The notes under the pieces were generated by a model. That model saw only the letters and a program-made list of their open reading frames with translations, was not told the origin of the DNA and ran no database searches. The translations under genes were made by a program, and so were the position numbers. From positions 1,860,001 through 1,924,000 of the forward strand of contig JBLDXI010000017.1 of the NCBI GenBank assembly GCA_047495785.1: 64,000 nt of DNA. The letters run 5' to 3'. This DNA is from Lepidodermella squamata (lineage: Eukaryota; Animalia; Gastrotricha). Shown here piece by piece: positions 20,214 through 64,000 of the stretch (positions within the stretch are counted from its first letter, which is position 1; each line of letters begins with the position of its first letter).

Positions 20214-22334
20214 ATGTTTGAAATCCTTTTATTTAGTTTAGCTCTCCTGTCAAAATGGTTCAGCTTAGCTAGTTGCAATGAATTCACTGATGGCAAAGCT
20301 CCATTCTACTATTCGCCGAAACAGGAACCTGCTCGGTACTGCGAGTTCGATCAGGATTCATGCCAACTTTTATCTCCGGGCTGGGTTCAAGGGCCGAAAA
20401 AAATCATCGAAAACAAAGGATCCAGTGGGCTATTGGACCTCAGGAATATATTTAGTACCGGATATCAATGTTTAACGCTCAATTTCAAGCTGAGAAAAAA
20501 CTCAACCTTTGAAATTCGAGATTATTCTGGAAAAATTTTATTCAGGGCCGATAAATCGCGGAAGCTCGAAAAATGGCGAGAAGTTTCATTACCCGTCAAT
20601 TTCGAGGCAGGAGCTCTGCTTTTGGTCAGTGGAACAGTCGCGTTGGATGAAATCAGGATCTATAACACATCCTGTTTAACCGAACCTGGGCAGAATAACC
20701 GGTGGAAAAGAGACGCGGAAGTTTTTTCATTTTCAAGCCAAGTCCTATACTGGCCGAGCAGCTTGGTCCCATACGAAATCAGCTATGGATTCGACAATTC
20801 TCAAATCGATGCAATTATGAGGTCAATGGCTATAATTAACGAATCAACCTGCGTCACATTTCGCCCGAAACAAGCTACAGATCGCGATTTCGTGAGGTTC
20901 ATCAGTTCTGAATCAGGTTGTAGAGCCGAAGTTGGCTACCGAACTGGCCGGACCGAAATCCACCTCGGCGACGAGTGTTTCGAATTCAACGGCATCAAGC
21001 ATGTGGTCCACGAAGTTTTACACATCCTCGGCCTGTTCCACGAACATCAGCGGCCAGATCGAGATAAATACGTAAATGTCCTATATTCAAATATTTTAAG
21101 CGGGTCCTTCGTGAATTTTGAGAAAACTCAAGCTATGGATGGGCGAATTTTAGCGACGAATTACGACTATCGTTCAGTCCTCCACTATTCAAGTTCGGAG
21201 TACGTTAAATCAGATGGATTACGGTCGATTATTGCTAAAATCGACCCGAATATGGAACTTGGAAATCGAGTTGGCCCGACAATAACTGACCTGCAAAAGG
21301 TCGCGAATATTTACTGCAACGGTCGATTGAACAATCAAATAACGAATAAGGACATTTTCTCATCGGGCCAGACAGTTCAAGATTACGGGAAATCGGATTT
21401 TGAAATACGACTTTGGTCCGGTGGAGTTATTCCTTACGATTTCGCGCCGAGTCTAAACGCATCGCATCAAGCTACTATTTTGGCTGTTATGTCGAAATTG
21501 TCGGAAAATACGTGTTTAAAATTCTTACCACGCCAACCGGACCATAAAAATTACGTAAGACTGACCCTAGGTTCGCAGTGCAGCTCTAATACTGGAATGG
21601 GAGGATTCGGGCGCCAAACTATCATCCTGGGACCTTCAAATGGCGGCTGCTTAACCTTCGCCCGAATTTCAAGATTTTTGATGCTAACTGCTGGTGTACC
21701 TTATGAACACAGGTAAAAAAGTCGGGTTTACAATTAAAAAATTAAGGAGGAATTTGCAAATTTCAGGCGATCTGATCGGGACAATTTTGTGAGAGTTCTG
21801 TACCAAAATTTGCACCCAATGGCTCCGAGGCAAGGCTTCGAAAAGCTGCAGTGGACGGATCCTCGCATTCTTTCAGTCCCTTACGACTATCAGTCTATCA
21901 TGCACTGGCCTGGCAACTACGGCTCGATGGACCCTAATCGATTGAACACAATTGAAGCTATTGATTCAGAGCTATATCAAACTTTAGGAAACAGCGAAGG
22001 TCCGACACGATATGATTTGGAGAAATTGACCAGTTTGTATTGCCAATTGGATAAATCCTACCCCCGGCCTGAGATAACCACGCCAAGCGCAACCTTGCCC
22101 GTCCCAGTCCAGCTTGGCTACGATGATGATTATAGCGGAAATGATGAATTTGTTACAGATTCGATAAGATATCGCCCGAATGTCTTCAATCAAGTTGGTG
22201 ATACAACAACTCGAATCACAAGCCCGTTGTGGTACCTTATCACCGCGGGTGAAGATCGGTATAACAGCGGCTTGAGGATAACGACCAGAAAGGCAACATC
22301 TCGGCCTACTTACAGGCAGCTTTCATCCACTTGA
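20214..22334 (+). CDS. Signal + MAM-like + astacin (M12A, catalytic motif intact) + second, degenerate astacin domain
   Basis: CEFDQDSC...VALDEI (MAM-like); RWKR furin site; HEVLHILGLFHEHQRPDRD; Met-turn reads SVLHY. The second domain has RFLMLTAGVPYEHRRSDRD and SIMHW. Intron 21713-21766. Confidence 0.88.
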
Positions 22335-37873: not shown

Positions 37874-40800
37874 TCAGAAAAAGACTTGTGAACAAACAGA
37901 AGGTTTCAGCATGATGCTATCGACGGCGATAGAGCCGGCAATTGAATCCCCATTCAGCGCTTCAATGACGAAAACATAATTTTCCGATTCCAAAACTGTC
38001 AGTTTCGCCTCGTTCCACGCTGAAATAGAATTTCTCGATGAAGCCGAGTAAGAAGCGATCAAATGCTGATTAGCCGTGTTCGCCAAACTTCTGACGTAGA
38101 CATTCAGGGTTTCAGCGGGGAGGTCTCGAATCCAGGAATTGATCTTATACAAAAATCTGAAGCAAACAGCTTTACTGTTCGTAACTTGCCCGGATTTCAT
38201 GTAATTCACAGCTCGAATGGCCGGTTTCCGCGAATCATTCGCAAGATAACCGGTTGATATGAGGGCGAATTTTCCGTCTGAACCTCCTCGAACCGGCTCT
38301 ACGCTACTTATTCTCCAGTCAGGCGAGGTTTGCCATTGGCAGAAATCGCCGGATGAAAAATCGCAAGACGCAGCTGTTTCGGCTGTTAAACCCTGCTCAA
38401 CGTTTACCTCCAAGCCGCCTTCAATCGTTGAACACTCGCTGTTTGTCGACAAAATGACCTCATCAATCGCGATGAGTGTCTTCGGACCCCCACTGGTCGC
38501 GACAAACTTCAAGGCGAATTCAGAGCTCGAAATTGGAATGTTGACTTGAGACTGAATCCATTTGTTGTGCTCGGCATTGTTCGCTGAGATAGTTAACAGC
38601 GTTACGTCACTTCGATTCCGAAAGGCCATGTTAATCGAAAATTGCGAGTCATCAGGCGTTGAATCACCAAAGGAGTACCAGAAGGTCATACAACTAACCT
38701 CACCAGGCCGCAGATATTTCGATTGCAAGGCCGAAGTTTTGCCCTAATAGTTTTAAGGAGGATTATGTTGCAGTTTTTTTCAATCAATTCCTTACCTTGC
38801 GTCCTTCCTTAACAACAACGAGTTTCCCATTCAATGAATTCTCCGAGTGATCCATCATCAAGTTATCTTCTCCAGCCGAAGACTCCCAGCGGAAACTCGG
38901 ATCCAGAGACGGTATGAAAAACTGGACAGTATCAACGCAAAGCATGTTATCCTCGAAATCGCATCTCAATTTAACAACGGCACTTTTGGCAGAATCGTTT
39001 TTCGCAAATGAAAAACAACTATCTTTAGTCAGAAGAAAATCATCAATAGCGATTTCACTGTCGATCTCGCCAGTTGTGACTCCTTCAATTCGCAGTTTGT
39101 AGGCTTCGGTAAGACCGTCGATACTAGCAGTTGCTCTGAACCATTTCGCCTCTTTATTGCCAGTTGCTTCGAACAGAACCATTTCACCCTTTGGCTGAGA
39201 GATGGCCTTAATCACCAATCTGCCGACATTCAGGCCGTTCATTGAGTAAAACATGGTGAAACATCTGAAGCCAGAGTTGGCTGGTACAAATGCTTCAATA
39301 GTCGCCTCGCCCGCGTTTGAAATAGTCAAATAGGAGCCAGTAATCGATCCTGTACTATGGTCACCCGTCACGCCGTAATTCGAGCTGGTCGATGACCGGC
39401 CTGATGTAGTTTTCCAGCTTGCAGTGTTATTCACGGCTTTCCACTGGCAAAGTCCTCTTTCGAAATTGCATAAATTTGAGGATTGATTAGGGGTAGGATC
39501 AGGTCGTGGAGTTGCTGCAGCTGCAGGAGATTTTGGTCTAGGTACCCTGCCCTCGGCATACGTCTCTTCATCACTTTCATCGCACGGCAATGTAGAAAGC
39601 GAAACATCGTCTAAGGCCATACCAGCGTCTGCAACTTTCGCTGCGACTGTAGCGTTGAATTGAAGGTAATAGATAACAGAGTCCTCCGTACTGACTGACA
39701 CCAACACTTGCGTCCACGCTGAGTAAGGATCCGTCGTTACCTCGCCAGGGTCTTCCGAAGACCACAGGAGTTTATCTGAAGCAGCGGTATCAGTGCTAAG
39801 AAACAACTCGAGCTTGCCGACATTCTTCGAAGGGCTAACCATTCTGTACCAAAATGAGAAGCATTTGAAATCGTCCGCAGCCTTAATTCTGGCACTTGTC
39901 AAAGTCGCCCGATTGCGCAGTCGGTTCGGCATAGCAGCGGCATCTACGCTGATCAAAGTGTTTGCTCCAGATCCTGTGTGATCCGTGATTCCTTTAAGGC
40001 CACGTCGTTTCCATGGGAAGCCTAGATCGGCATTCGTCCAGCCGCAAGGGCCAGTCTCAAACCCGCAATCAACTGGGCTCAGCATACCGTTACGGGCCTC
40101 CTCAACTGTGCCTAGACTAACCTCAGACCAATCGATGATAAACCCACTTCCAGCTCCAGTTGCATCAGTGTTGAACAGAAGAAATGCTTGATTTCGGGTC
40201 GTTGTCACAGCTCGTAGAGGTCGTTTTGTACCACATGCTTGGAAAATTACTGGGGCTGCGTCGTTGATACCGTCGAAAATCGTCAGGGTATCCTTCTCGC
40301 AGGCAACGCTTGGTTCAACGTCCAGCAAACTTATCGTAAACTGAACGGCTTTACCCTGACCGACCTGTAGCTTCCATCCACAGTTCTCATTCGCTCGGTA
40401 CAAGCCATCCGCTCTTAGATAGTTTGCAATTGTACCAGAGCCTGAGCTAACATCGACGGTAGTTGAAGTTTTGCACGGTATGTTATCTTCCCGGTTGACA
40501 GGAGGTCGCACGGTAGCTGGTCGCGGCGTAGTCGGTCGGGGAGGGGGTGGAGTGAATCCTCCACAATACACGTTAGCTATCTTCTGGAAATCATTCGCAG
40601 TCGGTAAACTTTCCGGCAGACCGCCTAATACTTCATTCGGGTCGGTTTTAGACACCAATGTTTTCACCCCAGCACCAACTGATGATTCTTCATTGCCGAA
40701 GTGCATTACTGATTTCTTGTCATAAGGCACGCTAAGAAAGCGTCGATCGAACGCGGTGTAGATGTTGAAAAGGAGTTTTTGAGCTGGTACTATATTTTGC

Positions 40801-41786
40801 CAATTCACATTGATGAAGCTATCCCTATCCGGTCTTACGTGCTCATGCCTCAAGCCAAGGACGTGGAGCAAACTGTGAGCTAAAGTCGACGGGGTGAAGC
40901 ATTTATCTGCTAGTCGGACCCGCTGTTTATCGCCGATTTTACCGACATCTGCAATGCATCCGTCGTCAATTTTAACGAACTCGACGAAATCGTCATCGGA
41001 AGGCAGTCGTGGCCGGAAAAGAATGCAGCTCTTGATACTTATGCTGGCCATGACTGATTTCAACATTTGAATCTGGCTTTCTTCAAAGCCTGGGACTATC
41101 GTAAATGGGACGTTGCCGTTTCGCCACTGCATGTTTTCCGGCAGGCGTCGAACCATATCTGGCGCCGGAGCACTAACGACTGACAGCGCATCGCTATTTC
41201 CAGTTGCGCAGGATGAATTGAACAGTAAAATATCGTCAAGGGAAACGGAGCCAGTTCCGTCTAGCTCAACTTGGATTTCAAGCCTGACTTTTCGATCTGA
41301 GTCGATTTGAAGGGTTTGCAGCCTCCATTGACCTCTATTACCCGCCTCGCCAGTCACACTCCACTGAACTTGCCCAGTTCCAGTCGACTGGGGATACTGT
41401 AAAATTGTCAACTTTGAGTTGTCTCCAGATATTCTGTACAGAAATGACATGCAGATGGATCGAGTTGGTTTAGGAGGAGATGGCTCCAACTGCCGGCTCA
41501 TGTATCTAAGTCGGCCTGAGGCTCCATTTGGTGTTGTCAAGTAGCGAATGCTTGTTCTGTTTGTATCCGCTCTAACAAGCCGCAAGTCTTCAGCGATAAG
41601 GTTGAAGTTGAACGGGTTTCTCGGGTTGTTAGACCAGTCTCCTACAGCACACAGGTTCACGGTCTCTTCCTCAAAGTTGCATTCACTGAAAGGATATAGA
41701 TTAGCTGGCGGGTAAATCTCGGCTTCATTGGACCAGGTGATCAATAACAGGAATGCAATTGAAAGAAGGAGTAGCTTAAACATCAT
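37874..41786 (-). CDS. Signal + MAM + pseudo-astacin (Glu->Ser) + CUB + 4 MAM
   Basis: MFKLLLLSIAFLLLITWSNEA signal, CNFEE (MAM), HSLLHVLGLRHEHVRPDRD, SVMHF, CUB (NCGW...CEKDTLTIFDG...GFII), then CGFE/CNFE/CDFE/CDFS MAM starts. Single intron 38744-38795. Confidence 0.88.
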
Positions 41787-42013
41787 GTAATATGCTTCCC
41801 TAATATGATACAAAACATAGGTATGTGATTCGTGTTTTATTACTCTGTTTTGAGTCGAGAGGTAAAAAACGCTTTTACTATGTAGCAATGAAAAAAATGG
41901 CCGTGCGACATTCACGTTGAATCTTTAGGCTAGCTTGAATATCCGGTTTTGTCGGTGGAACGGCCCTCAGAGATAAAACACTATAATATTTTGAAGTAAA
42001 TAATGCGAGTTTA

Positions 42014-45000
42014 TTAGTTACAATCACCGGCCTTGACAATCAAGTCATCAATGGTTATTGATACAGAGTTAACATCCGGGCTTGACAACGTTTCCGCCCT
42101 AAAAGCAATTTCGTAACTGCTTGCCTCAAAAATGGTGATATTAATTGTCTTCCATGGCTGAGCCTTATTAGTGTCAGAAGCTGGCACAGCGTAACCTGCC
42201 AGAAGTCTTTGCTTTCCAAACTTGACTAAGTATACCATAAGGGAATCGCTCGGCAACATAGGAAGGGCTTTAGCCGTACTCCATAAACGATATTTGAAAG
42301 ATAAGCATGACTTCATCACTGCTCGATCGCGCACTTTGATCTCTGGACTGACTAGAAAAGACACCTTACCATTCCCTCCAGGATTTCCATCCGAAGTTTG
42401 GGTAATTTGGGCAGTGTTCTCAACGATTTTCCACAACCCAAATGCTTGCCAATCGCAAAATGAATTTCTGCTAAAATTGCAGGAGGTGAATGCATCGTTC
42501 GACCGTGCCGGATCATTTTCTTCGTGAAACACTGAGGTTTCGCAGCTTTCATCCAACCTCACGTCATCCAAAGCAATCAAAGTCCCTCGACCGCCTGATT
42601 TTGCTATCAATTCGAGCTTATAAGTCTCTCTGCGATTCATGTTGATCCCTGTCAGATCACGCTGAGTTCGCACCCAAGTATTTCGCTCAGGACTCATCTG
42701 AATCGGAACTGTAATCTCCGATATTCCTTCTCTATCAAGACTGAGTCTGATCATAAGCTCAGCTTCTCCCGGAGTCGAGTTGCCGATAAAATACCACATT
42801 GTAAGGCAACCATAATTCCCAAAGTGCTCAGTAAGAGACGATAAGTTTGCCAAATTTCCGCGTCGGCCGTGTCTCGCCACAGCAACATGACCATTGGTGG
42901 AATTAGTTGAGCGGTCGATCAGCTGCCCAGTCGAATCTTCCCAGCGAAATAGCCCGGATCTTACAGCCATGAATGACATCGATTGGTCACAAAGATCACC
43001 CCGTTCGAAGTCGCAATATACAGATTGAGGCGAACTTTGCGTGGGAGATGTTCGGCTCGACATTAGCGGCAGACAATCGCCTCGTTCGACCCGCAAATCA
43101 TCAATAGCGATGTCACTATCTTTCATAGGGCTTACAGCTGCTTGCAGGGTAAGAAAAAGACCCTCCTGTGAGCTCAAACTCAACAAAGCTCGCTGCCACT
43201 TCGGGCCCTGGTTATTGATCGTAGTAAACAGGGTCTTGGAAGAAAGGGCGGTTTTTACGGTGAGGGAGCCAACACTTTGGCCATACATGTTGTAGTAGAA
43301 CGATAAGCACTGTAATCCGGGGTTTATACTCAGATTCAGAGCCGCGAGTGAACTTGACGTTGACATCCGGCCGCTGACTTTCGAAAAGGCCAGGAGATAA
43401 CAGCCATCTGACGAGTTATTCCGGGTACCATTTACCCCAAAGTTTGAAGAAAGCGAAGATCGGCCAGTCTTAGGAAGCCAAAAGGATTCGCCAGTCATGT
43501 TGTTCGAAATAATGGGAGATTTAGCCCATGGACATTCAATTACAGGTATGGTTGTCGGTCGAGAAGAGGAGGGTACAACGGTTGTAGGTGATGTTTTCAG
43601 TTCAGTTTCGATGCAAGCGGATCTCGAAATTCCTATGTCATCGATCGCAATACCGGCGTTTGTCTGCTTCTTAGCAATGACCCCAGTAAAAAGCAACGAG
43701 TAAGTAGAGGAATCCAGCTGAGGATTGTTGAGGGCTACTTCAGCCCTTAACCAGGTTGATGAGTTATTGACGGGTGATGACCATAGAATGACATCTGAAT
43801 CTTCCTTGACCATTCGGAGCTCAAGTTGCCCGGGGTTGCCTTGCATTCGATACCAAAACCAGAAGCATTTGTACTCGTCAGTCATGCTTATTTTGCCGCT
43901 AAGTAGATGTGCCGAGCTGCCGCGTGACGCAGCATCCACGGCATCCAAGGAAACGTAAACACCTGATTGCGTTCCAGAGGTATGGTCATCCATTATCCCT
44001 TCAAGTTTCTTGCGTTTCCACTGCAACCTCGCGCTCGAGTTACGATTAGCCCAGTTGCAAAGAGTGCTTTCAAAGCTGCAGTCAAAAGGAAGACCTGTAG
44101 TCGTGTCATAAACTGATTTTTTGACACTCAATTCGAATCCTTTGCCAGCTCCGGATTCATCACTTGTGAAGACAATGAGGACTTGGCTGCCCGAAGAAAA
44201 AATGCTACCGGATGGGCGTCTGCTACCACATCCTCGAAATAGTTGGCTGGAACGAGTGGAAGCCCCGTCGTAAATAGTGAGGGAATCTTTCGAACACTGA
44301 GTAGAATTCGAATTCGCTGAAGAGAATTCAATATCCATAATCGAAATAGAAATATTGATTTTATCAGTTGTACTGGCAGATTGCACGAGCCAAGAACACT
44401 GTTGATCAGGCAAGTAGAATGCATCGTTCACTTCGGGGTTTCCTATCACAACTTGGCTTGAATCGAGACTTATTTTAGTTTCGGTGCGACAGGGTGGTGC
44501 GCCGTTCGGCTGTGTAGCAGAGACGTTCGTTTTCGGCACGGGAGGAGGCCTCGTTGCACCTTTGCAGTATAGTTTAGAAATTTTGTGAATGTCTGACGGC
44601 CGTGGTCCATCATTCAGATGGGGACCGATTGTTATTGAAGAATCGTTTAAAGCTTCAAGGCTGACTAATCCAGATGATTTGACTCGATCATCTTCGAAGA
44701 AGTGCATGACCTGTAGTTAAGGATAATACATGCATACAATAACCTCATATACTTTCAAAGCTCACCGATTTCACATCATAGCCAACTTCGAGAATCGCAG
44801 GGTTTTGCGGTATAATTTTAAACTCGTCTAAATACTCTTCCATAATATTATTCCAGAGTACTTTAACAAACTGATCGCGATCATTTCGAACCTGGTAATT
44901 GAGGAAAATATTTATTTACTTGGTATATCTAATTATCTTGAAACATACATGCTCATGATAAAGGCCAAGACAATGAAGCACCGCGTGGCTTAGTTCCGAG

Positions 45001-45884
45001 TAATAAAATCGGTTCTTAGGAAGTTCAATACTCTGCTTACCGCCTACACGGCCGACATCCGAGTAAGCGGATGAATCATTGATTTTGACAAACTCAACGT
45101 AGTCCACCTGAGCTGAATCTCCATTGGAGCGAGGTACAAATTTAACGCACGTCTTGAGAGAAATTTCATTCATAACTCGCATGATCATGCGTATTTGCCC
45201 ACTGTCGAATCCTGGCAAAATTATATAGGGTACTATTCCGTTGACCCACAAATCAGCGCCGGTTGACATGTCGATCTGTCTGATATTTCCGGCTGATCGC
45301 GGTGAGTCACTCACCGCGACCGAACAGGAAGAATTGTAAAGCGCTATGTCATCGAGGGATACGTAGCTAGATCCACCAGTAGTGCTGGCGACTATTTCCA
45401 GCCTCACTGAGTCGGTCAACGTTATTTGAATTATGTGGGATATCCACGTGTCTTGCAGGTGATTTGCTGCTTCCCAAACGATTCTACTTGCCCCTGAGGT
45501 TTGTTGATACTCAAGGATGGCCAGATGAGTCGAGCTTCCTGATAAAGAGTATAGAAAACTCAGGCAAAGCGCTCGAGCAGGTCCAGGTTGCGAGTTATCA
45601 AGCCAGTCTGTGGTCAACACTGCAGTACCCCTTGCCCCCGTCGGCGTTGATAGATACTGAATTTTGGATGTTGGGGTTTCATCATCGGGTCGGACATCTT
45701 CTGCTGTTGTAACAAAGCTAAAAGGGTTTGATGGCTTGTTCATCCAGAGCAAGCACGGGTGATCCCCGTCGTCGAAGCTGCATGCAGCAATAGGACTAAC
45801 CGAGTTAGGTGGGAATAGCTTCTCATTCCCGGAAACCGCCAAAAAGGCTACGAAGAAGGTCGAGATGAAAACTGGCCAGTTCAT
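42014..45884 (-). CDS. Signal + MAM + pseudo-astacin (Glu->Ala) + CUB + 4 MAM; paralogue of 37874-41786
   Basis: MNWPVFISTFFVAFLAVSG signal, HAVLHCLGLYHEH|VRNDRD, S|VMHF. Two short introns inside the astacin domain (~44892-44948 and ~44711-44766), then a single ~900-codon exon. Confidence 0.87.
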
Positions 45885-46084
45885 GTTTTATTATGCTCCA
45901 TCAAAGAGTTTAGGATCATATAAATTCGCGCTTATTCTGTTGTCTACTAGCAAAAAGAATAAACGTTTTTCCACGCATTTCTATTGCATTTCGTGTCATT
46001 ACATTGAGGCTGTAACAGCTACAGCAATGCTATCACGCCATTAATCTCAGCCATCTCTTTCCTTATTATAACGCAGTTTTTTAG

Positions 46085-46876
46085 TCATGCGCAGTATAGT
46101 TTAGATATTTTTTGAATGTCTGACGGCCGGGGTCCATCATTCACATGTGGGCCGAGATTTATTGAGGGATCTGGTAACCCATCTTTGTTTAAAGCTTCCA
46201 TGCTGACTAATCCAGGTGATTTGGCCAGATCATAATTGATGAAGTGCATGACCTGTAGTGAAGGATAATACATTTATGCAACAACGTTATGCTTTCGAAG
46301 CTCACCGATTTCACATCATAGCCAACTTCAAGAATTGCAGGGTTTTGCGGTATAATTTCAAACTCGTCTAAATATTCTTCCTTAATATTTTCCCATCGGA
46401 CTTTGATGAACTGATCGCGATCGTTTCGCTGCTAATTGAGGAAAATTATTTAGTAACTATTTATATCTAATTATCTCGAAACATACATGCTCATGATAAA
46501 GGCCCAGACAATGAAGCACCGCGTGACTTAGTTCCGAGTAATATAATCGGTCCTTAGGAAGTTCGATACTCTGCTTTCCGCCTACACGACCAATTTCCGA
46601 GTAAGCGGCTGAATCATTGGCTTTGACAAACTCAACGTAGTCCACCTGAGCTGAATCTCCATTGGAGCGAGGTACAAATTTAACGCACGTCTTGAGAGAA
46701 ATTTCTCTCATAACTCGCATGATCATGCGTATTTGCCCAGTGTCGAATCCTGGTAAAATTATGTATGGTACTATTCCGTTGACCCACAAATCAGCGCCGG
46801 TTGACATGTCGATCGGTCTGATATTTCCGGCTGAAAAGGCAACGAAGAAAGTCGAGGTGAAAACTGACAACTTCAT
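46085..46876 (-). CDS. Truncated duplicate: signal + pseudo-astacin only (intact frame; gene or young pseudogene)
   Basis: Near-identical to the astacin exons and introns of 42014-45884. The MAM is deleted in frame (FFVAF|SAGNIR) and the protein ends KLYCA*. Confidence 0.7.
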
Positions 46877-47067
46877 GTTTTATAATACTCCATTAAAACG
46901 TTTAGGACTCATAAGATTTCTTGTTTATTCTGTTGTCTGCCTGTAAATAAAACTCAGTTTTCCACGCATTTCTATTGCATTTCGTGTTATTGCAGTAAAA
47001 GCTACATCTGTGCTATGTTAAGCTCAGCCATTACTTTCTGTATTATAACGCAAACTAATGCAGTTTT

Positions 47068-49444
47068 TCAGTCATCTTCCAGTTGATAACATGGCCTAGG
47101 CATGACGTCGACTCCGTCAATCGCAATTGCAGACATCCAGGATTCGCCTGATTTAGCCTCAAAAATTAATTGAAAGTTAGCAGACTCCAGCACATCCAAT
47201 TTGGCTCGAAGCCAAGAATCGTCAGTATCACAACTTGCTTGTGAAGAGCTGGCCGAGAATGACGCAATTAGTCGAGGATTGCCAGTTAACGCCTTTGTGA
47301 GAACATTTAGAGAGTCGTGAGGGACATTGCGGAACCATCCAGTTAATTTATAGGAAAACCTCAAGCAAAAGCGTGAAGTCCTCGCCGCAACGGAGTTAAT
47401 AATTGATGTAGTTATAGTATCCGGTAACCGGATAGATTCTAAACCAGGTCTGCTGATCACTGAAGGTGAAGGCAACATGTAACCATTAGAGATTTGGGCG
47501 AAACATTCATCAGCCTCCAAGTCATCTGAACATATCGCGGACTTGACATAAGTATTATTAGTCGTTTTCCATCCACCGGATACGGTAAAGCTACAACCTC
47601 TGAAGCCAGACAGGAAGGAACAACGGATCAGGGGCTGTGATGATGACATCAGACCTTGGCTTGCTGTGGTCATTCTTCCCTGTTTTGGTCGGCGTGCATT
47701 TTGAGTAGGAGGATTTCCGCTCCCACTGCCACATTCACTTTTACTCAGGATGATATCGTCAATCGCAATTAAAGAGCCGCCGCCTCCTGATGTTGCAGAA
47801 AACTGAAGAATGAACTGATAATCAACATTTGCCGGGACCTTTGCCTCAGCCCTCCTCCATTGTTGTTTCACTGAATCGTCAATTGAGATGAGTCGTTGCG
47901 GATCTTTCCCGTTTGAATCTAGTATGGTTAGGTTCAACGAGGCCGGTTGCCACGTTCTCGCGCCAATGAAATACCAGTACGAGATGCATTGAACTCTTTT
48001 CGGGTCAAATTCTGCGGTTTGCATTATCGCCACAGCTCCGCGGGTTCCATCCTTTATTATCCCAACTCGTCCCTGGCCTGAGTTTGACGTATGGTCTGTT
48101 ATTCCATTAGTCCTACCTGCAGACTCAGTCCAACTAAATGATCCTTCTCTTTTTGTTAAAGTGAATTGAAGACTTGTCCCGCAAAGATCGGCTTGCTCGA
48201 AGTCGCATACAGTGTCTCGGATTTCACGAACCTGGACAGCTGGTCTGTTGAGACAGGGTGTCGTAGTCACTATGAAGTCATCCAACCCGATGTCACCATC
48301 CTGAGACCCTGAGTTTGACGCAGCTTCAAACCGTATTTTATAGGCCTCAGTAAAACCATCCAGGTTCAACTCAGCTTTCATCCACTCACTTCCTTTGCTT
48401 CCGGATGCAGTGAATAGAGTCATAGATGCTCCGAGGTTTTCTTCAAGAAGAATCTTGACATTCAGCCTACCGACATCTCTGCCATACATAAAATACCAGA
48501 ATGACAAGCACTTGAACCCAGAATTTTCCGGGACTGATGTTTGAATAGCTGCGTTAACCTGGATATTTCTATCCGGTTTGAACAGTAGGTAGTACCCATC
48601 GCCAGTTTTCTTCGTGTGGTCAGAGGGAACGGCGTAGTCACTTGATTCATCGGATTTGCCGCTAGAACGTCGCCACGATTCTTCTACGGACCATTGGCAG
48701 AAATTGTCCTCGAAATCGCACGAAAACCCAGGTACAATCGGACTTTTCGTTGTCGTAGGCGGTAAAGTTCGCCGGGTTGTTCTAGGGGTGGTTGTAGGAG
48801 GGGCTGTTGGGGATGGGTTAGCAGTCGGTATTCCAGGCAAATTCAAACAGTTCTCAGTGGCTAAAACGTTATCAATCCCAACGAACCCAGTGCCATTTCG
48901 ATTGCTCTTCACCCGGAAAAACAGGGCCGTCAAATCTTTCGAGTCCACAGCGATTCTCACTTGCTGCCAATTGCGATAGGGATCGGCGTTAACGTCATTC
49001 TCCGATGACCATATTACGTAATTTCCGTAACGATGTTCGCCCCAAAGCCGTAGAACTGCGACATCGTCAAAATAGGACCCGGCAGCTCCTTCCTCTGAGA
49101 ATCGGTACCAGAAGGATAAGCAGCCGAAGGTTAAGGTCTCAGCTTTCAAACATCGGTAGTCGTAATTCGTCTTCGGATCATTCAGAGTCACGCCGACGAA
49201 TGCGCTATTCAACGGGCCATTTTCGATGGAAATCGTTCGATTGAAAGACCGCCAGTTCGTTTGATTTCCAATCGAAGCCCATCCGCAAATTCCTCTTTCA
49301 AATCTATAAAAATCATTCCCCCTTAAACTTTCTCCGTATCATATTTACTAAAACTAGCCTGCAAGATACAGAACAGTCTTCGGATTGGGCTGCAGTTAAT
49401 GTCGCCAGAAAAGCAGAAATAACTGCCCAAAGTAGTTTTGGCAT
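47068..49444 (-). CDS. Secreted MAM-only protein (4 MAM domains); GC-AG intron 49304-49358
   Basis: Signal MPKLLWAVISAFLATLTAA (ATG 49444). Spliced SC-R-FERGICGW, then MAM repeats CDFEDNFCQW, CDFEQADLC and CSF with the typical ...IAIDD... endings. Confidence 0.85.
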
Positions 49445-53025: not shown

Positions 53026-56000
53026 ATGAAGTTATACCTGCTTGAGAAGTAAGTTGCAATTCTAGTTTTTCCGGTTTAATAGTTGGAAATATTTTCAATT
53101 ATTATCTCAAGACCATTTAGAGGGTGAGATGCATGCAATTTAATTTGTACGCTTTCTGGTGGATGGCAATTTAGCGATTTTTTAATAATACCAATTTTTG
53201 CATGATCGCATAAAAATTGATTAATAAATCATTAATTTAATGCCATTTGTTCCCATATGAGCGTCTGACCTAAATCGGGCGTTTTATGGCGGTATTATAA
53301 TTTTCCCGGGCTTTGATACTAAAATTATCGCTATAGGATATTGTCGCGAATGCTTCTATGGCTGCTGAAAAGTTTGAAAATTAATTTAAAATCTGAAAAA
53401 TCGATTCTATCCAGGTTCACTCGCTGCGTTAGCAGGTGCGCCTTGTTCTTCGTCTGCTCGATATTCCTCATCAGCATCAGTCTACTCGTTGTCTCGCTAT
53501 TCGTCCGCCATCCAAGCCAATCGCTTCAGAATCCTATCGAGGTATATAAACAATTTTTATTAAATTTTTGGTTATATAAGTCTTATAGGGCTTGGATGCT
53601 GAAAGCTCGCCACTGGGCCAGCGATTGCGGTCGTACCGGCAATTTACCGAATCGACAACATGGCAGCCGAAATTCACTAAAGTTACAACGGCTTACACGG
53701 CCGAAAATGCGAATATGCAAAACCTGATGCGGGCGGAAGTCGTTGAATTTTCATCGTCGCCTCGAAATGCTCGAATGGTTGTCAACCCAATCAGCGGCCA
53801 GCCAATAGATGCTACAACCGATGAGGAAGAGAACGCGCTAACTGCGACTGAAGTCATCACTCAGCCAACGTCGAGGCAGAAACAACGGCTGCTAGACGTT
53901 GCGGCCTGCGCCGGTTGGGCAGATGGCGGTTTAATCGCGAAAAATTCGCTACCGGTGCCATTTCGATCGGCAACAAATGACGACTTATTATCGCCGCAAA
54001 GCGTCTGGGCGTTGTGCCGGCTGGCGGAGAAAATCGAGCAGAACCCAGCCTACGCCCAGGTGTGTAGGCGCAAGCCGATTTCGAACGATGTCGATTTGAG
54101 TAGCGAAGATTCATCAACGACCGGCATTGAGGGGGATAATCACCTGAAAATGGACATAACAGCCGATTGCTGCCCGGTCATTTCTATTCACACGTTTTTG
54201 CAAATCGCCTTCCCGCAGCAGGATCCGTGCGAAAGTGCCAGTCGTGTTTCGTTAAGTCAAACTGAAAGCTTGCGGTCTGACATTTTCTTTTGCAAACGAA
54301 CAGCGGCTGATCCGAAGTTTTCGAACGAGACCTACCCGTTTTGCGTCGATTATAAACAACAAATCACCGCATTCCTAACTTTTCTTGCCGATAAAAGCTT
54401 TTTGAGGGTAAGACTTAATTACAGCGTGTCCCATAAGTAACGCAAACAAAGGAAAATCAGAAAAATCTTAGAAATATCGAAAATGCCATAAGATTAATAA
54501 TCACATACGTCTCTGAAGTATGAATGGGATGAAAAAATTCGAAGAAATTTGATCTAACCAGGTAAAAACCGAAAATTACCGAACCAGTTAGCATCGGGGT
54601 TTTCATGGTTTTCTCCGGTAAATTTTTAATTTTTTCGGTAAAATCGTGGATAAATTCAGTGGGCAATTCAAAAATTAGTTTAATTTCCTTAAAAAAAATT
54701 CGAAATAACAAAATGGTTGTGCGACTTATGGGACACGCTGTTTTTCTGAAATTCTGGAAATTTACTGAATTTTTCTTAAATAGGAAACTCAATCCTTAAT
54801 GACTTCAAACATTTGGCTACCGCTGAAAGATGAGTCTGAAAGCCATGATACTCAGGCAGTTCACGATCTTGAAGTTGTCGAACAGCTTATAGACGAGTTG
54901 AAGCAGCAGTCGAACATTTCATCGAAGCTTGAAATTATGTTCCAAATGCCGAAAAATCCTAATGTTGTGAATATTCAACGGCGAAGGAAAATGCTTGATC
55001 TGGCGACGGAATTTATTCGAACCCCGGAGACGGCCACCTTAATAGGAACAGCGACTCTGGCGACGTTTTTATTCCTTATCCTAGCGGCGAATTTGTCTAT
55101 TCTACGCGTTTTCGGCATGCTGTTCGCGTTTTTGAGCGTGTTTAGCTGCGGGTATTTCGCGTTTTTCGTCGCGTATGGTGTAGCGCCAACGCTGGTAGGG
55201 CTCGTACTCCCGTCGATTTACATCGCCAGCTTAATTTTCGACGCCTACTTCAACTTCACGGCTTCAATGACCGGATCAGGCGGTGACAATCGAGCGTTTC
55301 AAAACACGTTGCAATCAGCTATGAAGGCAACAATTGGCCCGCTCGCTCATTCGGCCCTGCTCCAGTCATGCGTGACCTTTGCGGCGATGGGCTTCCTAGT
55401 GGACGACGTATCAGGGGCTAGGCCTATTTGCCATTTAATTGCAGTTATGAGCTTGTTAACCTTCGTGGTTATGGTCCTATGGCTGCCAGCTACTTGGTCA
55501 TTATCTTTCCGCAATAAACAAAGCGTCTCAATGCCAATTGGCGATGCGGATGAGCAGGCTAAAATTTGCTGTGCCGCCTGCGAGGCGAGGTGCCATTCAG
55601 CCACGAAACAAGCTGCGTTCGGCCTGACGCCAGTTTTCGAGCGTATTGTAACCGGGATGACTTACCTAATCGTTCGATTCAACGCAGCGTTTTGCCTAGT
55701 TCCGTTTTTAATCATCGCCGGGTCTCTAGCCTCGTTATTCTACTTCGGAATTTCTCTCACGGCGGCTAATAGCGAATCAGCTGTTGTGAACCTATTTTCC
55801 CAACCTCCAGCTACATCAGCTTCGACTTTCCGCGCCAAACAGAAGACGTTATTCAGTTACGAGGACGAAAAAACGCGTTGGAAATCGCTGTTGAAAGACA
55901 CGAATCGAACTGATGTTGACCCGTTCTACGAGTGCACGAATCAATTTCAACGAATTTCGTTCATTTTCAAGAGTTCAAACTCGTTGAACGACGTCAGTGA

Positions 56001-58602
56001 CGATGTGTTGTTCTCCCGCGAGACGCAACTGTGGTTCCGCCGGTTTTGTAACGAAAGCCGCCATTGGCTGGAGACGGGCGGCGGGGGCGGCGAGGCTGGG
56101 CGGCATCGGGTCAAAGTTCACGCTTTGCGCGAATGCGCCGTCGAGCGGTTGATACCGTACTTCGAACAGCGCCCATGCGCACCGATGCGTGACTCGGAGG
56201 GTCAGCAGTTGACGAAAGACCCGTCGCCTTGCTGTCAGAACTTCAGATTTCCGTGGGACCCGGCTGTCTACAAACAGTGCCTTCGCCAGTATGTGATTGA
56301 TCAAATTTTCAAAATGGGCACTGAGCCAAATATCGATCTGCGATTCTCACGCGATGGAACTGTTGAGACTGGTTTCGCCGTCGAGTTCGACGTCGCGTTT
56401 CTTTCCATCAACCGAAGCGCTGGGGCGAGCAGAAGTTCTCAAGACTCAAGCTCATGTGCCCTTATGTCAGAACTTTACGAAAAAGCTGTTGCTTGGGTAA
56501 GTATTAAGAGATACTCTTAACTTTTTGGTCACCTTGAAATTAGGATCCCACCGCTAATTCCCAAAAAAACTCGTGATTTTTTCCGAATTTAGGGCTTAAA
56601 TTTAAATTGGCATTGAAATTTTAAATTTTAAACTTCGTAAAATTTAGACATTTTTTAATTTAAATTTAAATTTAGGGTTACATTTTTATTTTAGGATCCT
56701 CAATTTTAGAGCAAATATTTTGACCTTCAATTACATTTTTATTAAATTTTTTCTATAGCTTGATCACCAGCTGTTGTCTGCTCCTTACCAGCTTCGCAGT
56801 TCAGGAAGCGTTTTCGTTGTCAGTCCGCAGCTGAGCGGGCTCAATTTGCGAACTACGGCGGCCAACTGCCTGTTATTCGGCATTTTGGGCTGCTTGGGAT
56901 TTTGCGCTTTCAACGCCCTTTTGGGAACACTCAACATTGTCCACGCTACTTTCACGCTCATGGCTGTTTTTTGCGGCGTATTGGTAATTTTTCCTCTGAA
57001 CCAGATAATAATCACCTTAAAATGTGTATTCTCAATTTTCCAGATGGCTGGCTCAATGATTGCAGCTCTTCAGTGGGAAATTAGTCTGTATGAAAACGTG
57101 ATATTGGCTCTGTTCCTGGTACCAATGATCGCTAAAAGCTCAATTTTTGTGGCTATGACTTTCAGGTAAATTATTACAATGGCTTTAAAATGCTGATATA
57201 ATTCAGCTTTCAGCTTGTCCCATAACCTACCACTTTCCAACTTCTTTGAGAAAATTTATATATTTTTACAAAATCCAACCTTCGAAGTTCATTTTCCAGC
57301 CATTATCTGCGATTTATCAAAAAAAAACCAAAATTTATCGCAGAAAACTCGGAAAACCCGATTGTATCCGTTCGGTATTAAGCTGGATTTTTTCGGTATC
57401 TTTTAATTCATAAGTGACAAGATCCATAATTGGTTACAATTTTTCTTAAAAATATTAATTTTTTCAGACGATACTTCTACCTCTTGCGCTCGAATAACGT
57501 CTACGACAAAACGAGCGACTACAACGTTGAACCCGTCGCGCGGGCTACCTTCCACCATTCTGTACGCGTGCTATCACAGAGCTTCATCTTCGTCGCCTTA
57601 CTTTCAACACCGCTCATTTTCGACACCGGGTTCGGATTCGTGCAACGCCTCGCCCAGTTCCTGCTCATCGCCGCTACCTCGTCCTACTTCACCGCTCTTT
57701 TCTGTCTATTGCCTCTACTTTGCCGATTCGCCTACTGCACGTCAAAGTTCGGAATCGCCGCTTCGTTCGACCAGCCGAAAAGCCACCATGAAAAAGCAAA
57801 CTCGGAAAAGCGATACCCACCCCCGATTATCAGGCACTCACCCCCATCAAGTGCATCGCCAAAGTCTGGATCGACATCCTCCGGGCCGATTTCGTCTTCT
57901 TCCCGGCATTCGAACGACGCGGATGACCCAATTATTATTACGGCAAGAAATAACCGATTAAAGCCACAATCGACCCTGACTGGTTCCGGGCCTAGGATAA
58001 ACGGAATTTTACTCAATAACAACACCTATAACGGCCGGAAGAATAAGGATTCGACGAAGCGTCGAGCGAACAATTCGGAGCTATATAGCTCGGGTATTTT
58101 CAGTAACAGCAAGTCAAACGGGCACATTCCTAAAGCTTTAGAGCAGCTGATACCGCCAACTCGCCCGGAACCGGGTACTAGCGAGTTGATTTGGGTCCCA
58201 CGTTTCCCAACCGCCGGCGTGGCGTTGGAAGAATTTCGCGTGCTGAGCAGCCCGACGCCCGAGGAGGTCACGCCTCCGCCGACCTTTGACCTCGCGACGT
58301 CGTGGAGCGCGAGCTCGAACACGCAGTTCGGGGTCGCGGCGCTGCAACACCTTGAGAGTGAATTTCGGCCTAGGCCTTGCAATTTGGGCAATAATAAGCC
58401 GTGCAGCCAGTCGAAGAGCTTTCACGGCGCCGCGCTTACGGTGGCAACGACCGAGGTCAAATCAAGCGTGTCGAACGGCGAATCGCAAACTTTCCTATTC
58501 TCACCGGCTTACAAGCAACACCCCCACGGCGGCGGCGAATCGATAGCGCAATATCAACATCGAACATTGGGAAGAAATAGCAGCAATCACTTAACTCAAT
58601 GA
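53026..58602 (+). CDS. disp: Divergent Dispatched-family (RND/SSD) multipass membrane protein
   Basis: TM1 then NPIEGLDAESSPLGQRL (Dispatched DP..GFE.RGT.IGQRL type). ETQLWFRRFC and C.VE.L..YFE.RPC...PCCQNFRFPWDPAVYKQCL (Dispatched ECD2 type). Two TM bundles and a long S-rich tail. Exons joined by GT-AG introns starting from ATG 53026. Confidence 0.78.
54422..54740. mobile_element. MITE family 2 (Tc1/mariner-like ends), intronic in dispatched
   Basis: Perfect 17-bp TIR CAGCGTGTCCCATAAGT / ACTTATGGGACACGCTG. TA on the left flank, TT on the right. Confidence 0.8.
57211..57422. mobile_element. MITE family 2, degenerate intronic copy
   Basis: Begins CAGCTTGTCCCATAAC and contains the reverse complement of the internal ACCGAA..ATCGGGTTTT motif. 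Confidence 0.5.
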
Positions 58603-62463: not shown

Positions 62464-64000
62464 TTATTCAGTTGTCTGGCACCACCACGCCTTGAAAAAT
62501 CCAACATCATCGATCGCAATATCGGAAGATCCGCGCCGATCCGCGCCAACTGTTGCTTGGAAAGAGACTCGAAAAAGGGTGGTAACATCGCGCGGAACTG
62601 CAACCTGCGCATTGTTCCACTGGCCACCCTTGAAGCCGCGAATAACCAACAAAGGGCGCACATCGTCAAGCCCGGTTGTTGCCGACCGGGTAACAAGAGA
62701 TACAGCAAGCCTGCCGGTGTAACTGCCGGCTTTGTAGTACCAGAAATTGATACAGTCAACGTCGGTGATGTTGAACTCGCGTTTCGACGCCAACACGGCT
62801 ACGTCGCCGGGAAATCGGCCTCGAGAGACGGCCGCTGCGAATTGGCCATCTTTCGACGACTTTGTATGGTCTACTTTCGGCAATATTGCGCCAAGAACTC
62901 TGTCGACACTAGTAGCACTTCCCTTCGTCACCTAAATTAGCGACAAAAAAATAATTTTGAATTAAAATTTTTTGAAAATTTTGAAATTTAAATTTAAATT
63001 TTGAAAAATTCCTTAAAATATAAATTAAAATTAAAATTATTTCAAATTTCTTATATTACCTGCCAATTGAATGTTGCCAGGTCCCAATTTTCAAGCAAAT
63101 TCAGGCAGAAAGTTGAATCTTCGAAATCGCAGAAATATGTATACAACTGAGTAACGTCCCGCGTTGTAGTCGGCGTCGTTCTAACAGTCGTCGGTTTCGG
63201 CGTTATGAAATAGGCAAACGACCTCGCGACTGTGAATTTAAATCCCGATCCTTTCGGATAGCCCTCGCCATAAATTCGGAAGGCAATGTAAATCGAATTT
63301 GATGTCGTTTTAAAAATGTCACGCGGCCGTTCGTTGCCGCATAACGACGCAACTGTTGGGTAAGAGCTGTTGATTCCGTCGTAGATAAACAGTCCAGCTA
63401 GGGAGCAATTCGGCGAATTCTCTATATCGAACCATGAAAATTGAACAGCAATTATCGTCCGGCGAACACGTGGGTCATCATCGTTTTCAGCGTCGTAGTA
63501 GTCAGGTGTTAATTCAAGCGGAACGGTGACGAGCCAGCTTTCATTCTTGTACATTCGATCATTCTCGTCGGCGGAATTTTCTATTCGGACAAACGTTTCG
63601 TTTTCGTAAATTGTCGGCACTTCCCCGTCCAAATTCAGGTCGGAATCACCTTGGTATGGGATTAAATGACTAGGCGGCTTGAAAGGCGCCACTGTTGTGC
63701 TCGGGGGCGGTTCGGTCTTGAAAAACTGGCAGGTCGAGTTGAAAACGTGAATGCTTTTCAGGTAGATTATACTATCGACCGATATATCCTCTCGTCTCAG
63801 TCGAGTTCCATTCAGCAATAGGACTATGGTAGAATCCACCATTATTTGCAACGTTTCGACCAACCATGAGTTATGGCAACTTTCGCCCTGAGTTTTTCTC
63901 CAGATCAATTTCGAACTATTTTGAATAGGATAGCCGTAACTTAGCAGCTGGAGTGAGTTGTCGCGATTCCCACACATTTTGTAAACTATCGTAATACAGT
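62464..64000 (-). CDS. 3' part of a MAM-CUB-MAM secreted protein (5' end beyond window)
   Basis: CUB (FSWFDIENSPNCSLAGLFIYDG...LCG...GSGFKF), CDFEDSTFC, intron 62932-63059, and MAM ending SDIAIDDVGF...C. Confidence 0.8.

What the first reader, a model, noticed from the sequence alone, without database searches (positions are those of the whole stretch)
37874..49444. Tandem array of MAM-rich pseudo-astacins (non-catalytic, His ligands retained)
Seen: three adjacent genes keep HxxxHxxGxxH and the Met-turn but replace the catalytic Glu with Ser or Ala and the Tyr switch with Phe (SVMHF). Two are MAM-astacin-CUB-MAMx4, and a MAM-only paralogue lies directly upstream. The large frames are intact despite deep divergence between the two long paralogues. 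Established: the Glu is the essential general base, and MAM/CUB are adhesion and oligomerisation modules. Inference: a selected family of substrate traps, decoys or scaffolds, perhaps partnering the one active astacin at 20214. I know of no described family with this architecture.
Basis: partly seen in the sequence, partly recalled or inferred. Interest (0 to 1): 0.78.

Follow-up and report, generated by a model that had tools for sequence, protein, structure and literature searches.

The report
Dead astacin proteases with MAM domains
A small invertebrate genome carries a tandem cluster of secreted proteins built on a zinc-protease (astacin) fold that keeps its metal-binding site but has lost the two residues needed to cut; selection has kept them intact, so they probably bind rather than cleave, which is a new variant of a known theme.

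Summary
Four minus-strand genes lie at 37874-49444.
- g1 and g2 encode signal peptide-MAM-astacin-CUB-MAMx4 (1286 and 1252 aa). They are 33% identical.
- g3 is a 226-aa signal peptide plus astacin-only copy. A roughly 1.5-kb partial tandem duplication of g2 made it.
- g4 is signal peptide plus MAMx4.

All three astacin domains keep the three zinc histidines, the family glutamate, RxDRD and the Met-turn. They replace the general-base Glu with Ser or Ala, and the zinc-binding Tyr with Phe.

Several results argue for selection.
- Of 15 columns invariant in 36 active astacins, only those two are lost in every dead copy.
- The dead domain and the N-terminal MAM are the best-conserved parts between g1 and g2 (43% and 46%).
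- g2-g3 dN/dS is 0.33.
- One relative from an environmental assembly has the same architecture, with Met at the base position.

The nearest active relative is the gene at 20214, which belongs to the same MAM-astacin clade. A jellyfish protein reached the same pattern independently, and ADAM7 and ADAM29 show it among other metzincins.

I read these as selected, non-catalytic binding or scaffold proteins: a new variant of a known kind. The trap, decoy or partner function is untested. Earlier notes of this scan describe other dead-astacin families elsewhere in this genome.

The parts
37874..41786 (-). g1: 2 exons (41786..38796, 38743..37874), 1286 aa. Architecture: signal peptide-MAM-astacin(dead)-CUB-MAMx4.
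   Evidence: The 52-nt GT-AG intron splits the fourth MAM.
40557..41138 (-). g1 astacin-fold domain. Zinc motif HSLLHVLGLRHEH at about 40839-40877; SVMHF at 40698-40712.
   Evidence: Pfam Astacin 128.6 bits. Alignment to 1AST. AlphaFold2 pLDDT above 90 and TM-score 0.90 to 1AST.
42014..45884 (-). g2: 3 exons (45884..44949, 44891..44766, 44710..42014), 1252 aa, same architecture as g1. Zinc motif HAVLHCLGLYHEH at 44949-44987; SVMHF spans intron 2. The Cys64-Cys84 pair has been lost from both positions together.
46085..46876 (-). g3: 3 exons, 226 aa, signal peptide plus dead astacin domain only. It is 85% identical to g2, and the MAM (546 nt) is absent in frame.
46091..47052 (-). Duplicated segment that created g3. 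It matches 46075-45842 plus 45296-44564, which is the intergenic DNA plus the 5' part of g2.
   Evidence: blastn: 76% identity in the intergenic part and 88% in the coding-plus-intron part.
47068..49444 (-). g4: 2 exons (49444..49359, 49303..47068), 773 aa, signal peptide plus MAMx4. It is collinear with the C-terminal half of g1 at 30% identity.
   Evidence: The GC-AG intron is inferred only.
20214..22334 (+). Closest active paralogue. Architecture: signal peptide, MAM-like domain, RWKR site, astacin (HEVLHILGLFHEH, SVLHY), then a second zinc-less astacin domain (RFLMLTAGVPYEH, SIMHW).

Best explanation
g1, g2 and probably g3 are secreted pseudo-astacins. They have a correctly folded astacin domain that still holds zinc through its three histidines and Met-turn. 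They cannot hydrolyse peptides, because the general base (Glu93) and the transition-state or fifth-ligand Tyr149 are gone.

Selection keeps them. I infer that the domain now works as a metal-dependent binding module. On this reading its intact cleft, and a zinc ion left with an open coordination position, hold a peptide or an acidic side chain without cutting it. The CUB domain and the four or five MAM domains, joined by Pro/Thr-rich linkers, would supply oligomerisation or adhesion.

The N-terminal MAM sits where other astacins have their prosegment. The linker behind it keeps an Asp and an Arg in all long copies. It may therefore mask the cleft until it is cleaved, but that step is speculative.

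Shown: the anatomy, the specific loss of catalytic residues, and constraint. Inferred: zinc binding, binding without cleavage, and any partner.
For: - Domain calls and the 1AST alignment.
- The fold model matches astacin at TM 0.9.
- Of 15 columns invariant in 36 active astacin domains, only Glu93 and Tyr149 are replaced in all four dead members. Twelve are kept in all four, and the remaining one (Trp) is Tyr only in the environmental copy.
- Three different residues (Ser, Ala, Met) occupy the base position, so no substitute catalyst is conserved.
- Between g1 and g2 the identity is 46% for MAM1 and 43% for the astacin domain, against 12-27% in the linkers.
- Dead branches in the astacin tree are no longer than those of the active paralogues.
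- g2-g3 dN/dS is 0.33, bootstrap interval 0.18-0.59. Amino-acid changes that could be polarised split 6 to 5 between the two copies.
- An environmental gene of 1320 aa has the same architecture and an intron at the same S|VMHF site.
- All four proteins have signal peptides and no membrane anchor.
Against: - There are no expression data.
- There is no biochemical evidence for zinc binding or for lack of activity.
- The g2-g3 interval does not strictly exclude one neutral copy.
- g2's MAM tail evolves very fast (branch length 3.2).
- A single origin of the dead state has only 70/78 support.
- The linker that might mask the cleft is modelled with low confidence.
- Only one lineage outside this window was found. 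I could not show that it belongs to another species.
Confidence: 0.7

Rival explanations
1. The proteins are still hydrolases. Zinc-bound water would be activated by another residue or by the substrate, so they are unusual but active peptidases.
For: The three His, the Met-turn, Glu103 and RxDRD are all kept. That is more than a purely structural role obviously needs.
Against: The base position holds Ser, Ala or Met in different members, so nothing there is conserved. Tyr149 is lost as well. From my own knowledge of Yiallouros et al. 2000, cited in PMC9848320 but not read here, mutating Glu93 in astacin abolishes activity and Tyr149Phe lowers it strongly. g3 has no prosegment at all, which an active astacin would not tolerate.
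Confidence: 0.07
2. Part of the array is evolutionary debris. g3 would be a by-product of a partial duplication, and g4, with its odd 5' splice, may also be non-functional, still intact only because both are young or by luck.
For: g3 arose from a 1.5-kb segmental duplication, and its stop codon comes from the junction. g4 needs a GC donor. There are no expression data.
Against: g3 keeps both introns' splice sites and its reading frame, and lost the MAM by an in-frame deletion at dS about 0.2. Its dN/dS with g2 is 0.33, and changes are shared evenly between the copies. Coding DNA is 88% identical against 76% for the duplicated intergenic DNA. g4 keeps a 745-codon open exon at 28-30% identity to its relatives.
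Confidence: 0.2
3. The four units are exons of one large or alternatively spliced gene, not separate genes.
For: They lie on the same strand with short spacers of 100-200 nt between a stop codon and the next ATG.
Against: Each unit starts with its own ATG and hydrophobic signal peptide and ends with an in-frame stop. The environmental relative is a single stand-alone gene with unrelated neighbours.
Confidence: 0.03

Closest known systems
Active astacin-MAMx3 proteins of molluscs and brachiopods (Patella, Pecten, Lymnaea, Lingula; auto-named 'MAM and LDL-receptor class A domain-containing protein 1')
   Same: Secreted astacin domain followed by several MAM domains.
   Different: They keep HELMH and SIMHY. 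They have no N-terminal MAM and no CUB, and carry three rather than four C-terminal MAMs. They are not the nearest clade in the astacin tree.
The gene at 20214 in this window and the environmental P0044 cluster (MAM-astacin-astacin)
   Same: They fall in the same well-supported clade (99/98). An N-terminal MAM-type domain replaces the prosegment. Identity to g1 is 34% across the domain.
   Different: The first astacin domain is catalytically complete (HEVLH or HELLH, with Tyr kept). It is followed by a zinc-less second astacin domain rather than by CUB-MAMx4.
ADAM7 and ADAM29, metzincin pseudopeptidases
   Same: The three zinc histidines and the Met-turn are kept, and the general-base Glu is replaced (HQLGH, HHLGH; Table 2 of PMC11266112).
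   Different: They belong to a different metzincin family (adamalysin), are membrane proteins with disintegrin domains, and are vertebrate.
Jellyfish Sanderia malayensis protein P0103 (astacin-TSP1-MAM, twice)
   Same: Both of its astacin domains read HLLLH or HHIFH with SIMHF. That is the same Glu-lost, His-kept, Tyr-to-Phe pattern, also combined with MAM.
   Different: Independent origin: it is sister to an active jellyfish astacin, P0148, with 97/86 support. It has TSP1 repeats, no CUB and no N-terminal MAM.
Meprins and Limulus LAST-MAM; BMP1/tolloid
   Same: Astacin plus MAM (meprins, LAST-MAM) or astacin directly followed by CUB (tolloids). Fold matches.
   Different: All are active and all have a prosegment with an Asp switch. 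Meprins add TRAF/MATH and EGF domains, and tolloids add EGF and more CUBs. According to PMC9848320, the MAM follows the catalytic domain in the meprins and in the Limulus and Hydra astacins.

Membership tests
Astacin (MEROPS M12A) catalytic-domain fold | Match to Pfam PF01400 above its gathering score, and an astacin-like 3D fold | tested here: met
   g1 scores 128.6 bits against a cut-off of 22.5. The phmmer E-value to 1AST is 1.5e-25. The model has TM-score 0.90 and rmsd 1.8 Å to 1AST.
Astacin (MEROPS M12A) as an active peptidase | HExxHxxGxxH with the general-base Glu | tested here: not met
   The His, His, Gly and His are present. The Glu is Ser in g1, Ala in g2 and g3, and Met in the L001 gene.
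Astacin (MEROPS M12A) as an active peptidase | Met-turn SxMHY with the zinc-binding Tyr | tested here: not met
   All four members read SVMHF. The Met and His are kept and the Tyr is replaced by Phe.
Astacin (MEROPS M12A) | Family-specific Glu103 and the RxDRD motif after the third His | tested here: met
   HEHVRPDRD, HEHVRNDRD and HEHVRSDRD.
Astacin (MEROPS M12A) | Signal peptide plus a short prosegment with an Asp switch (FxGD) before the catalytic domain | tested here: not met
   A whole MAM domain lies between the signal peptide and the catalytic domain. g3 has no prosegment. The linker keeps one Asp, but not in the canonical motif.
Astacin (MEROPS M12A) | Two conserved disulfides (Cys42-Cys198, Cys64-Cys84) | tested here: inconclusive
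   g1 and the L001 gene keep all four Cys. g2 and g3 have lost both Cys of the second pair together.
Meprin subfamily | Catalytic domain followed by MAM, TRAF/MATH and EGF domains, with or without a membrane anchor | tested here: not met
   There is no MATH or EGF hit and no hydrophobic C-terminus. CUB follows the catalytic domain.
Pseudopeptidase (inactive enzyme homologue kept by selection) | Loss of catalytic residues together with evidence of purifying selection | tested here: met
   Only the catalytic residues are lost. dN/dS is 0.33. The domain is better conserved than the linkers. Frames of about 1250 codons stay intact at 33% identity.
Pseudopeptidase | Absence of peptidase activity and presence of a binding function | not testable with these tools
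   This needs recombinant protein, metal analysis and activity and binding assays.

The most novel reading that the evidence does not exclude
The combination 'three His kept, Glu lost, Tyr changed to Phe' may be a recurrent, selected state of the astacin fold. It was reached independently in this lineage and in a jellyfish. On this reading the protease becomes a zinc-dependent, non-hydrolytic recognition module: the metal's free coordination site clamps a ligand carboxylate much as a prosegment's Asp switch does. Here the N-terminal MAM domain would serve as a removable mask for a protein that is 'activated' for binding rather than for cutting.
Probability: 0.15. Interest if true: 0.65.

Novelty: new variant of a known kind. 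Interest (0 to 1): 0.45.

Why it matters
A 2024 review of metallopeptidase pseudoenzymes lists none from the astacin family (PMC11266112). A 2023 astacin survey found no astacins in gastrotrichs, for lack of data (PMC9848320).

A dead astacin that keeps its metal site, is under selection, and replaces the prosegment with a MAM domain offers a clean test case. It could show what a metzincin cleft and its zinc do once catalysis is gone. Earlier notes of this scan describe other dead-astacin families in the same genome, so large-scale reuse of this fold for binding may be a feature of this animal lineage.

It remains a lineage-specific variant of a familiar theme, with no functional data.

Tried and rejected
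- **Word-index protein search with g1 exon 1.** Only three weak astacin hits.
- **Word-index search with the MAM1-astacin profile.** Only two generic astacins.
- **Two JGI metagenome scans.** No member of the family. The four loci fetched are ordinary active or partial astacins.
- **Findings look-up by sequence.** Blank, which means nothing.
- **Codon path at the base position.** AGT in g1 against GCG in g2 does not decide between one loss and two.
- **Four-taxon tree of the MAMx4 tails.** It joins two long branches and does not settle how g4 or the environmental gene relate to g1 and g2.
- **The AlphaFold model.** It cannot say whether the MAM-astacin linker lies in the cleft, because pLDDT is below 50 there.
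- **ESM Atlas searches.** The shape search gave no cluster matching both domains in this order. The feature search found a MAM plus astacin cluster in molluscs, but gave no domain order.
- **Rejected readings.** A single giant gene, and pseudogene status for g1 and g2.
- **Organism.** I could not confirm it. Only the 43% GC agrees.
Full report
**What is there.** The region 37874-49444 holds four genes on the minus strand of an animal genome with introns of about 55 nt. I built the gene models from the window sequence in scripts.
- g1: 41786..38796 + 38743..37874, 1286 aa.
- g2: 45884..44949 + 44891..44766 + 44710..42014, 1252 aa.
- g3: 46876..46487 + 46428..46306 + 46252..46085, 226 aa.
- g4: 49444..49359 + 49303..47068, 773 aa.

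All introns are GT-AG except g4's single intron. Its only in-frame solution uses a GC donor (AG|GCTAGT), and that model is unconfirmed.

The joined (spliced) proteins were used only inside local scripts, for alignment, trees and dN/dS. Every search and fold tool received single exons by reference, so the step of searching with joined models was left out.

**Domains.** Pfam and a local HMM scan of the six-frame translation give these architectures.
- g1 and g2: signal peptide-MAM-astacin-CUB-MAMx4.
- g3: signal peptide plus astacin only.
- g4: signal peptide plus MAMx4.

None has a C-terminal hydrophobic anchor, and Pro/Thr-rich linkers separate the domains.

**Active site.** In the phmmer alignment to crayfish astacin 1AST, g1's HSLLHVLGLRHEHVRPDRD lies on HELMHAIGFYHEHTRMDRD, and SVMHF lies on SIMHY. 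The three zinc histidines, the glycine, the family-specific Glu103, RxDRD and the Met-turn methionine are therefore kept. The general base Glu93 is Ser and the zinc-binding Tyr149 is Phe. g2 and g3 read HAVLHCLGLYHEH and SVMHF.

An AlphaFold2 model of g1 residues 1-420 has pLDDT above 90 over the astacin domain. It superposes on 1AST with TM-score 0.90 and rmsd 1.8 Å. The N-terminal domain matches the MAM domains of neuropilin-1 and RPTP-mu.

**How the array arose.** g1 and g2 are collinear over their whole length at 33% identity. g4 is collinear with the MAMx4 half of g1 at 30% identity.

g3 is 85% identical to g2's astacin domain. At the DNA level, 47052-46091 matches 46075-45842 plus 45296-44564. 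A segment running from the end of g4 to the 'KLYC' at the end of g2's astacin domain was therefore duplicated in tandem. g3's stop codon comes from the junction. The 546 nt encoding the MAM are missing from g3 in frame.

**Is the dead domain under selection?** Five results say yes.
1. I compared 36 active astacin domains from the search hits with the dead ones. Of 15 columns invariant in the active set, only Glu93 and Tyr149 are replaced in all four dead members. Twelve are kept in all four, and one (Trp) is Tyr in the environmental copy only.
2. Between g1 and g2, MAM1 (46%) and the astacin domain (43%) are the best-conserved parts. The linkers are 12-27% identical.
3. In the astacin tree, the dead branches (0.8 to 1.4 changes per site) are no longer than those of the active paralogues in the same clade (0.8 and 1.2).
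4. For g2 against g3, dN/dS is 0.33 over 205 codons (bootstrap interval 0.18-0.59, dS 0.20). The introns are 85-88% identical, and the duplicated intergenic DNA is 76-82% identical. Amino-acid changes that could be polarised with outgroups split 6 to g2 and 5 to g3. g3 therefore does not look like a freely drifting copy, although the numbers are small.
5. g2 and g3 lost both cysteines of the Cys64-Cys84 disulfide together. That fits a fold which is still maintained.

**Relatives elsewhere.** A full HMMER scan of 1.84 billion cluster representatives with g1 exon 1 returned mostly giant MAM/CUB proteins. Only two clusters were collinear with g1.

The first is P0023, found in three ENA metagenome assemblies at 99-100% identity. 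It lies on a 22-kb contig, L001. Reading that contig gives a two-exon gene of 1320 aa with the same architecture: signal peptide-MAM-astacin-CUB-MAMx4.
- Its motifs are HMIMHALGLRHEH and SVMHF.
- Its 53-nt intron sits at the same S|VMHF position as intron 2 of g2 and g3.
- It is 33% identical to g1.
- It shares no nucleotide similarity with the window, and the contig is 41% GC against 43% for the window.

I cannot tell whether this is an orthologue in another species or an unsampled distant paralogue. Either way it is a further old lineage that kept both the frame and the dead state.

The second cluster, P0044, is MAM-astacin-astacin with an intact first site (HELLH, SVMHY). That is the same design as the window's gene at 20214.

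Two scans of JGI metagenomes and two word-index searches found no further member.

**Tree.** g1, g2, g3, the L001 gene, the first domain of the 20214 gene and P0044 form a clade with 99/98 support. I call it the N-terminal-MAM astacins. Inside it, (g1,(g2,g3)) has 97/80 support. Monophyly of the four dead domains has only 70/78 and appears in 64% of bootstrap trees. One ancient loss is possible but not shown.

The base position holds three different residues, and the codons AGT and GCG do not indicate an order of changes.

**The same pattern elsewhere.** The jellyfish Sanderia malayensis protein P0103 has the architecture astacin-TSP1-MAM, twice. Its two domains read HLLLH and HHIFH, both with SIMHF. 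They group with an active jellyfish astacin (97/86), so this is an independent origin. Among other metzincins, ADAM7 (HQLGH) and ADAM29 (HHLGH) also keep the histidines and lose the Glu (PMC11266112, Table 2). 'His kept, Glu lost' is therefore a known kind of pseudopeptidase. That review lists none from the astacin family.

**Comparison with known architectures.** The astacin review PMC9848320 describes the core layout as signal peptide, prosegment and catalytic domain. It places the MAM after the catalytic domain in the meprins and in the Limulus and Hydra astacins. It also found no astacins in Gastrotricha.

Among my hits, the nearest widely annotated layout is the active astacin-MAMx3 of Patella, Pecten, Lymnaea and Lingula. 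A-C-M-M-M-M occurs only in the P0023 cluster, and M-A-A only in the P0044 cluster. An ESM Atlas shape search matched only the astacin half of the model. A feature search found a mollusc cluster with MAM plus astacin, but it did not give the domain order.

**How it most likely works.**
- Shown: secreted proteins with an intact astacin fold and metal-ligand set, specific loss of the two catalytic residues, and constraint on the domain.
- Inferred: the domain binds zinc but does not hydrolyse. From my own knowledge of Yiallouros et al. 2000, cited in PMC9848320 but not read here, mutating Glu93 in astacin abolishes activity and Tyr149Phe lowers it strongly.

I therefore read the domain as a binding module carried on a MAM/CUB scaffold, and those domain types are known for adhesion and oligomerisation.

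A further, weaker inference concerns the MAM1-astacin linker. All three long dead copies keep an Asp five or six residues after the last MAM cysteine. All six clade members keep an Arg 6-20 residues before the conserved Trp; in the active 20214 gene that Arg lies in RWKR. The MAM and its linker could therefore act as a removable mask, but the model is unreliable in that stretch. g3, which has neither MAM nor prosegment, would be a constitutively open version.

I can say only that it is the closest active paralogue, and that it carries a zinc-less second astacin domain of its own.

**Limits.**
- The organism is unconfirmed.
- Earlier notes also report several other dead-astacin families in this genome, said there to be zinc-less. 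One unexamined note describes three tandem pseudo-astacins with an N-terminal MAM on another piece. The scan has therefore met this theme before on other DNA. I did not test those notes.

**Verdict.** The interpretation as selected non-catalytic proteins is supported, but the specific function is open. This is a new variant of a known kind, of moderate interest.

Noticed in passing
window 20214-22334 (+): This gene has two astacin domains in tandem after an N-terminal MAM-like domain and an RWKR furin-type site. The first is catalytically complete but has Leu in the Met-turn (SVLHY). The second has lost two of the three zinc histidines and the Glu (RFLMLTAGVPYEH, SIMHW). The environmental cluster P0044 has the same MAM-astacin-astacin layout.
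   Followed up: partly
window 62473-63998 (-): Another MAM-CUB-MAM gene runs off the end of the window. It has no astacin domain between the first MAM and the CUB.
   Followed up: no
window 49303-49358 (-): g4's only in-frame intron needs a GC donor (AG|GCTAGT) instead of GT. It is unconfirmed because no RNA data were available.
   Followed up: partly
protein P0103 (Sanderia malayensis, EukProt EP00794 P016171): A jellyfish protein with the layout astacin-TSP1-MAM, twice. Both astacin domains keep the three His but lack the Glu (HLLLH, HHIFH) and have SIMHF. This is an independent origin of the same dead state.
   Followed up: partly
window 53592-58602 (+): Three large open frames of 282, 573 and 390 aa directly upstream of the array have no Pfam match.
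   Followed up: no
window 42014-44083 (-), g2 MAM tail: g2's C-terminal MAMx4 evolves much faster than g1's (branch 3.2 against 0.7 changes per site). Its second post-CUB MAM has lost the usual CxFE...CxW start, yet the 899-codon exon stays open.
   Followed up: partly
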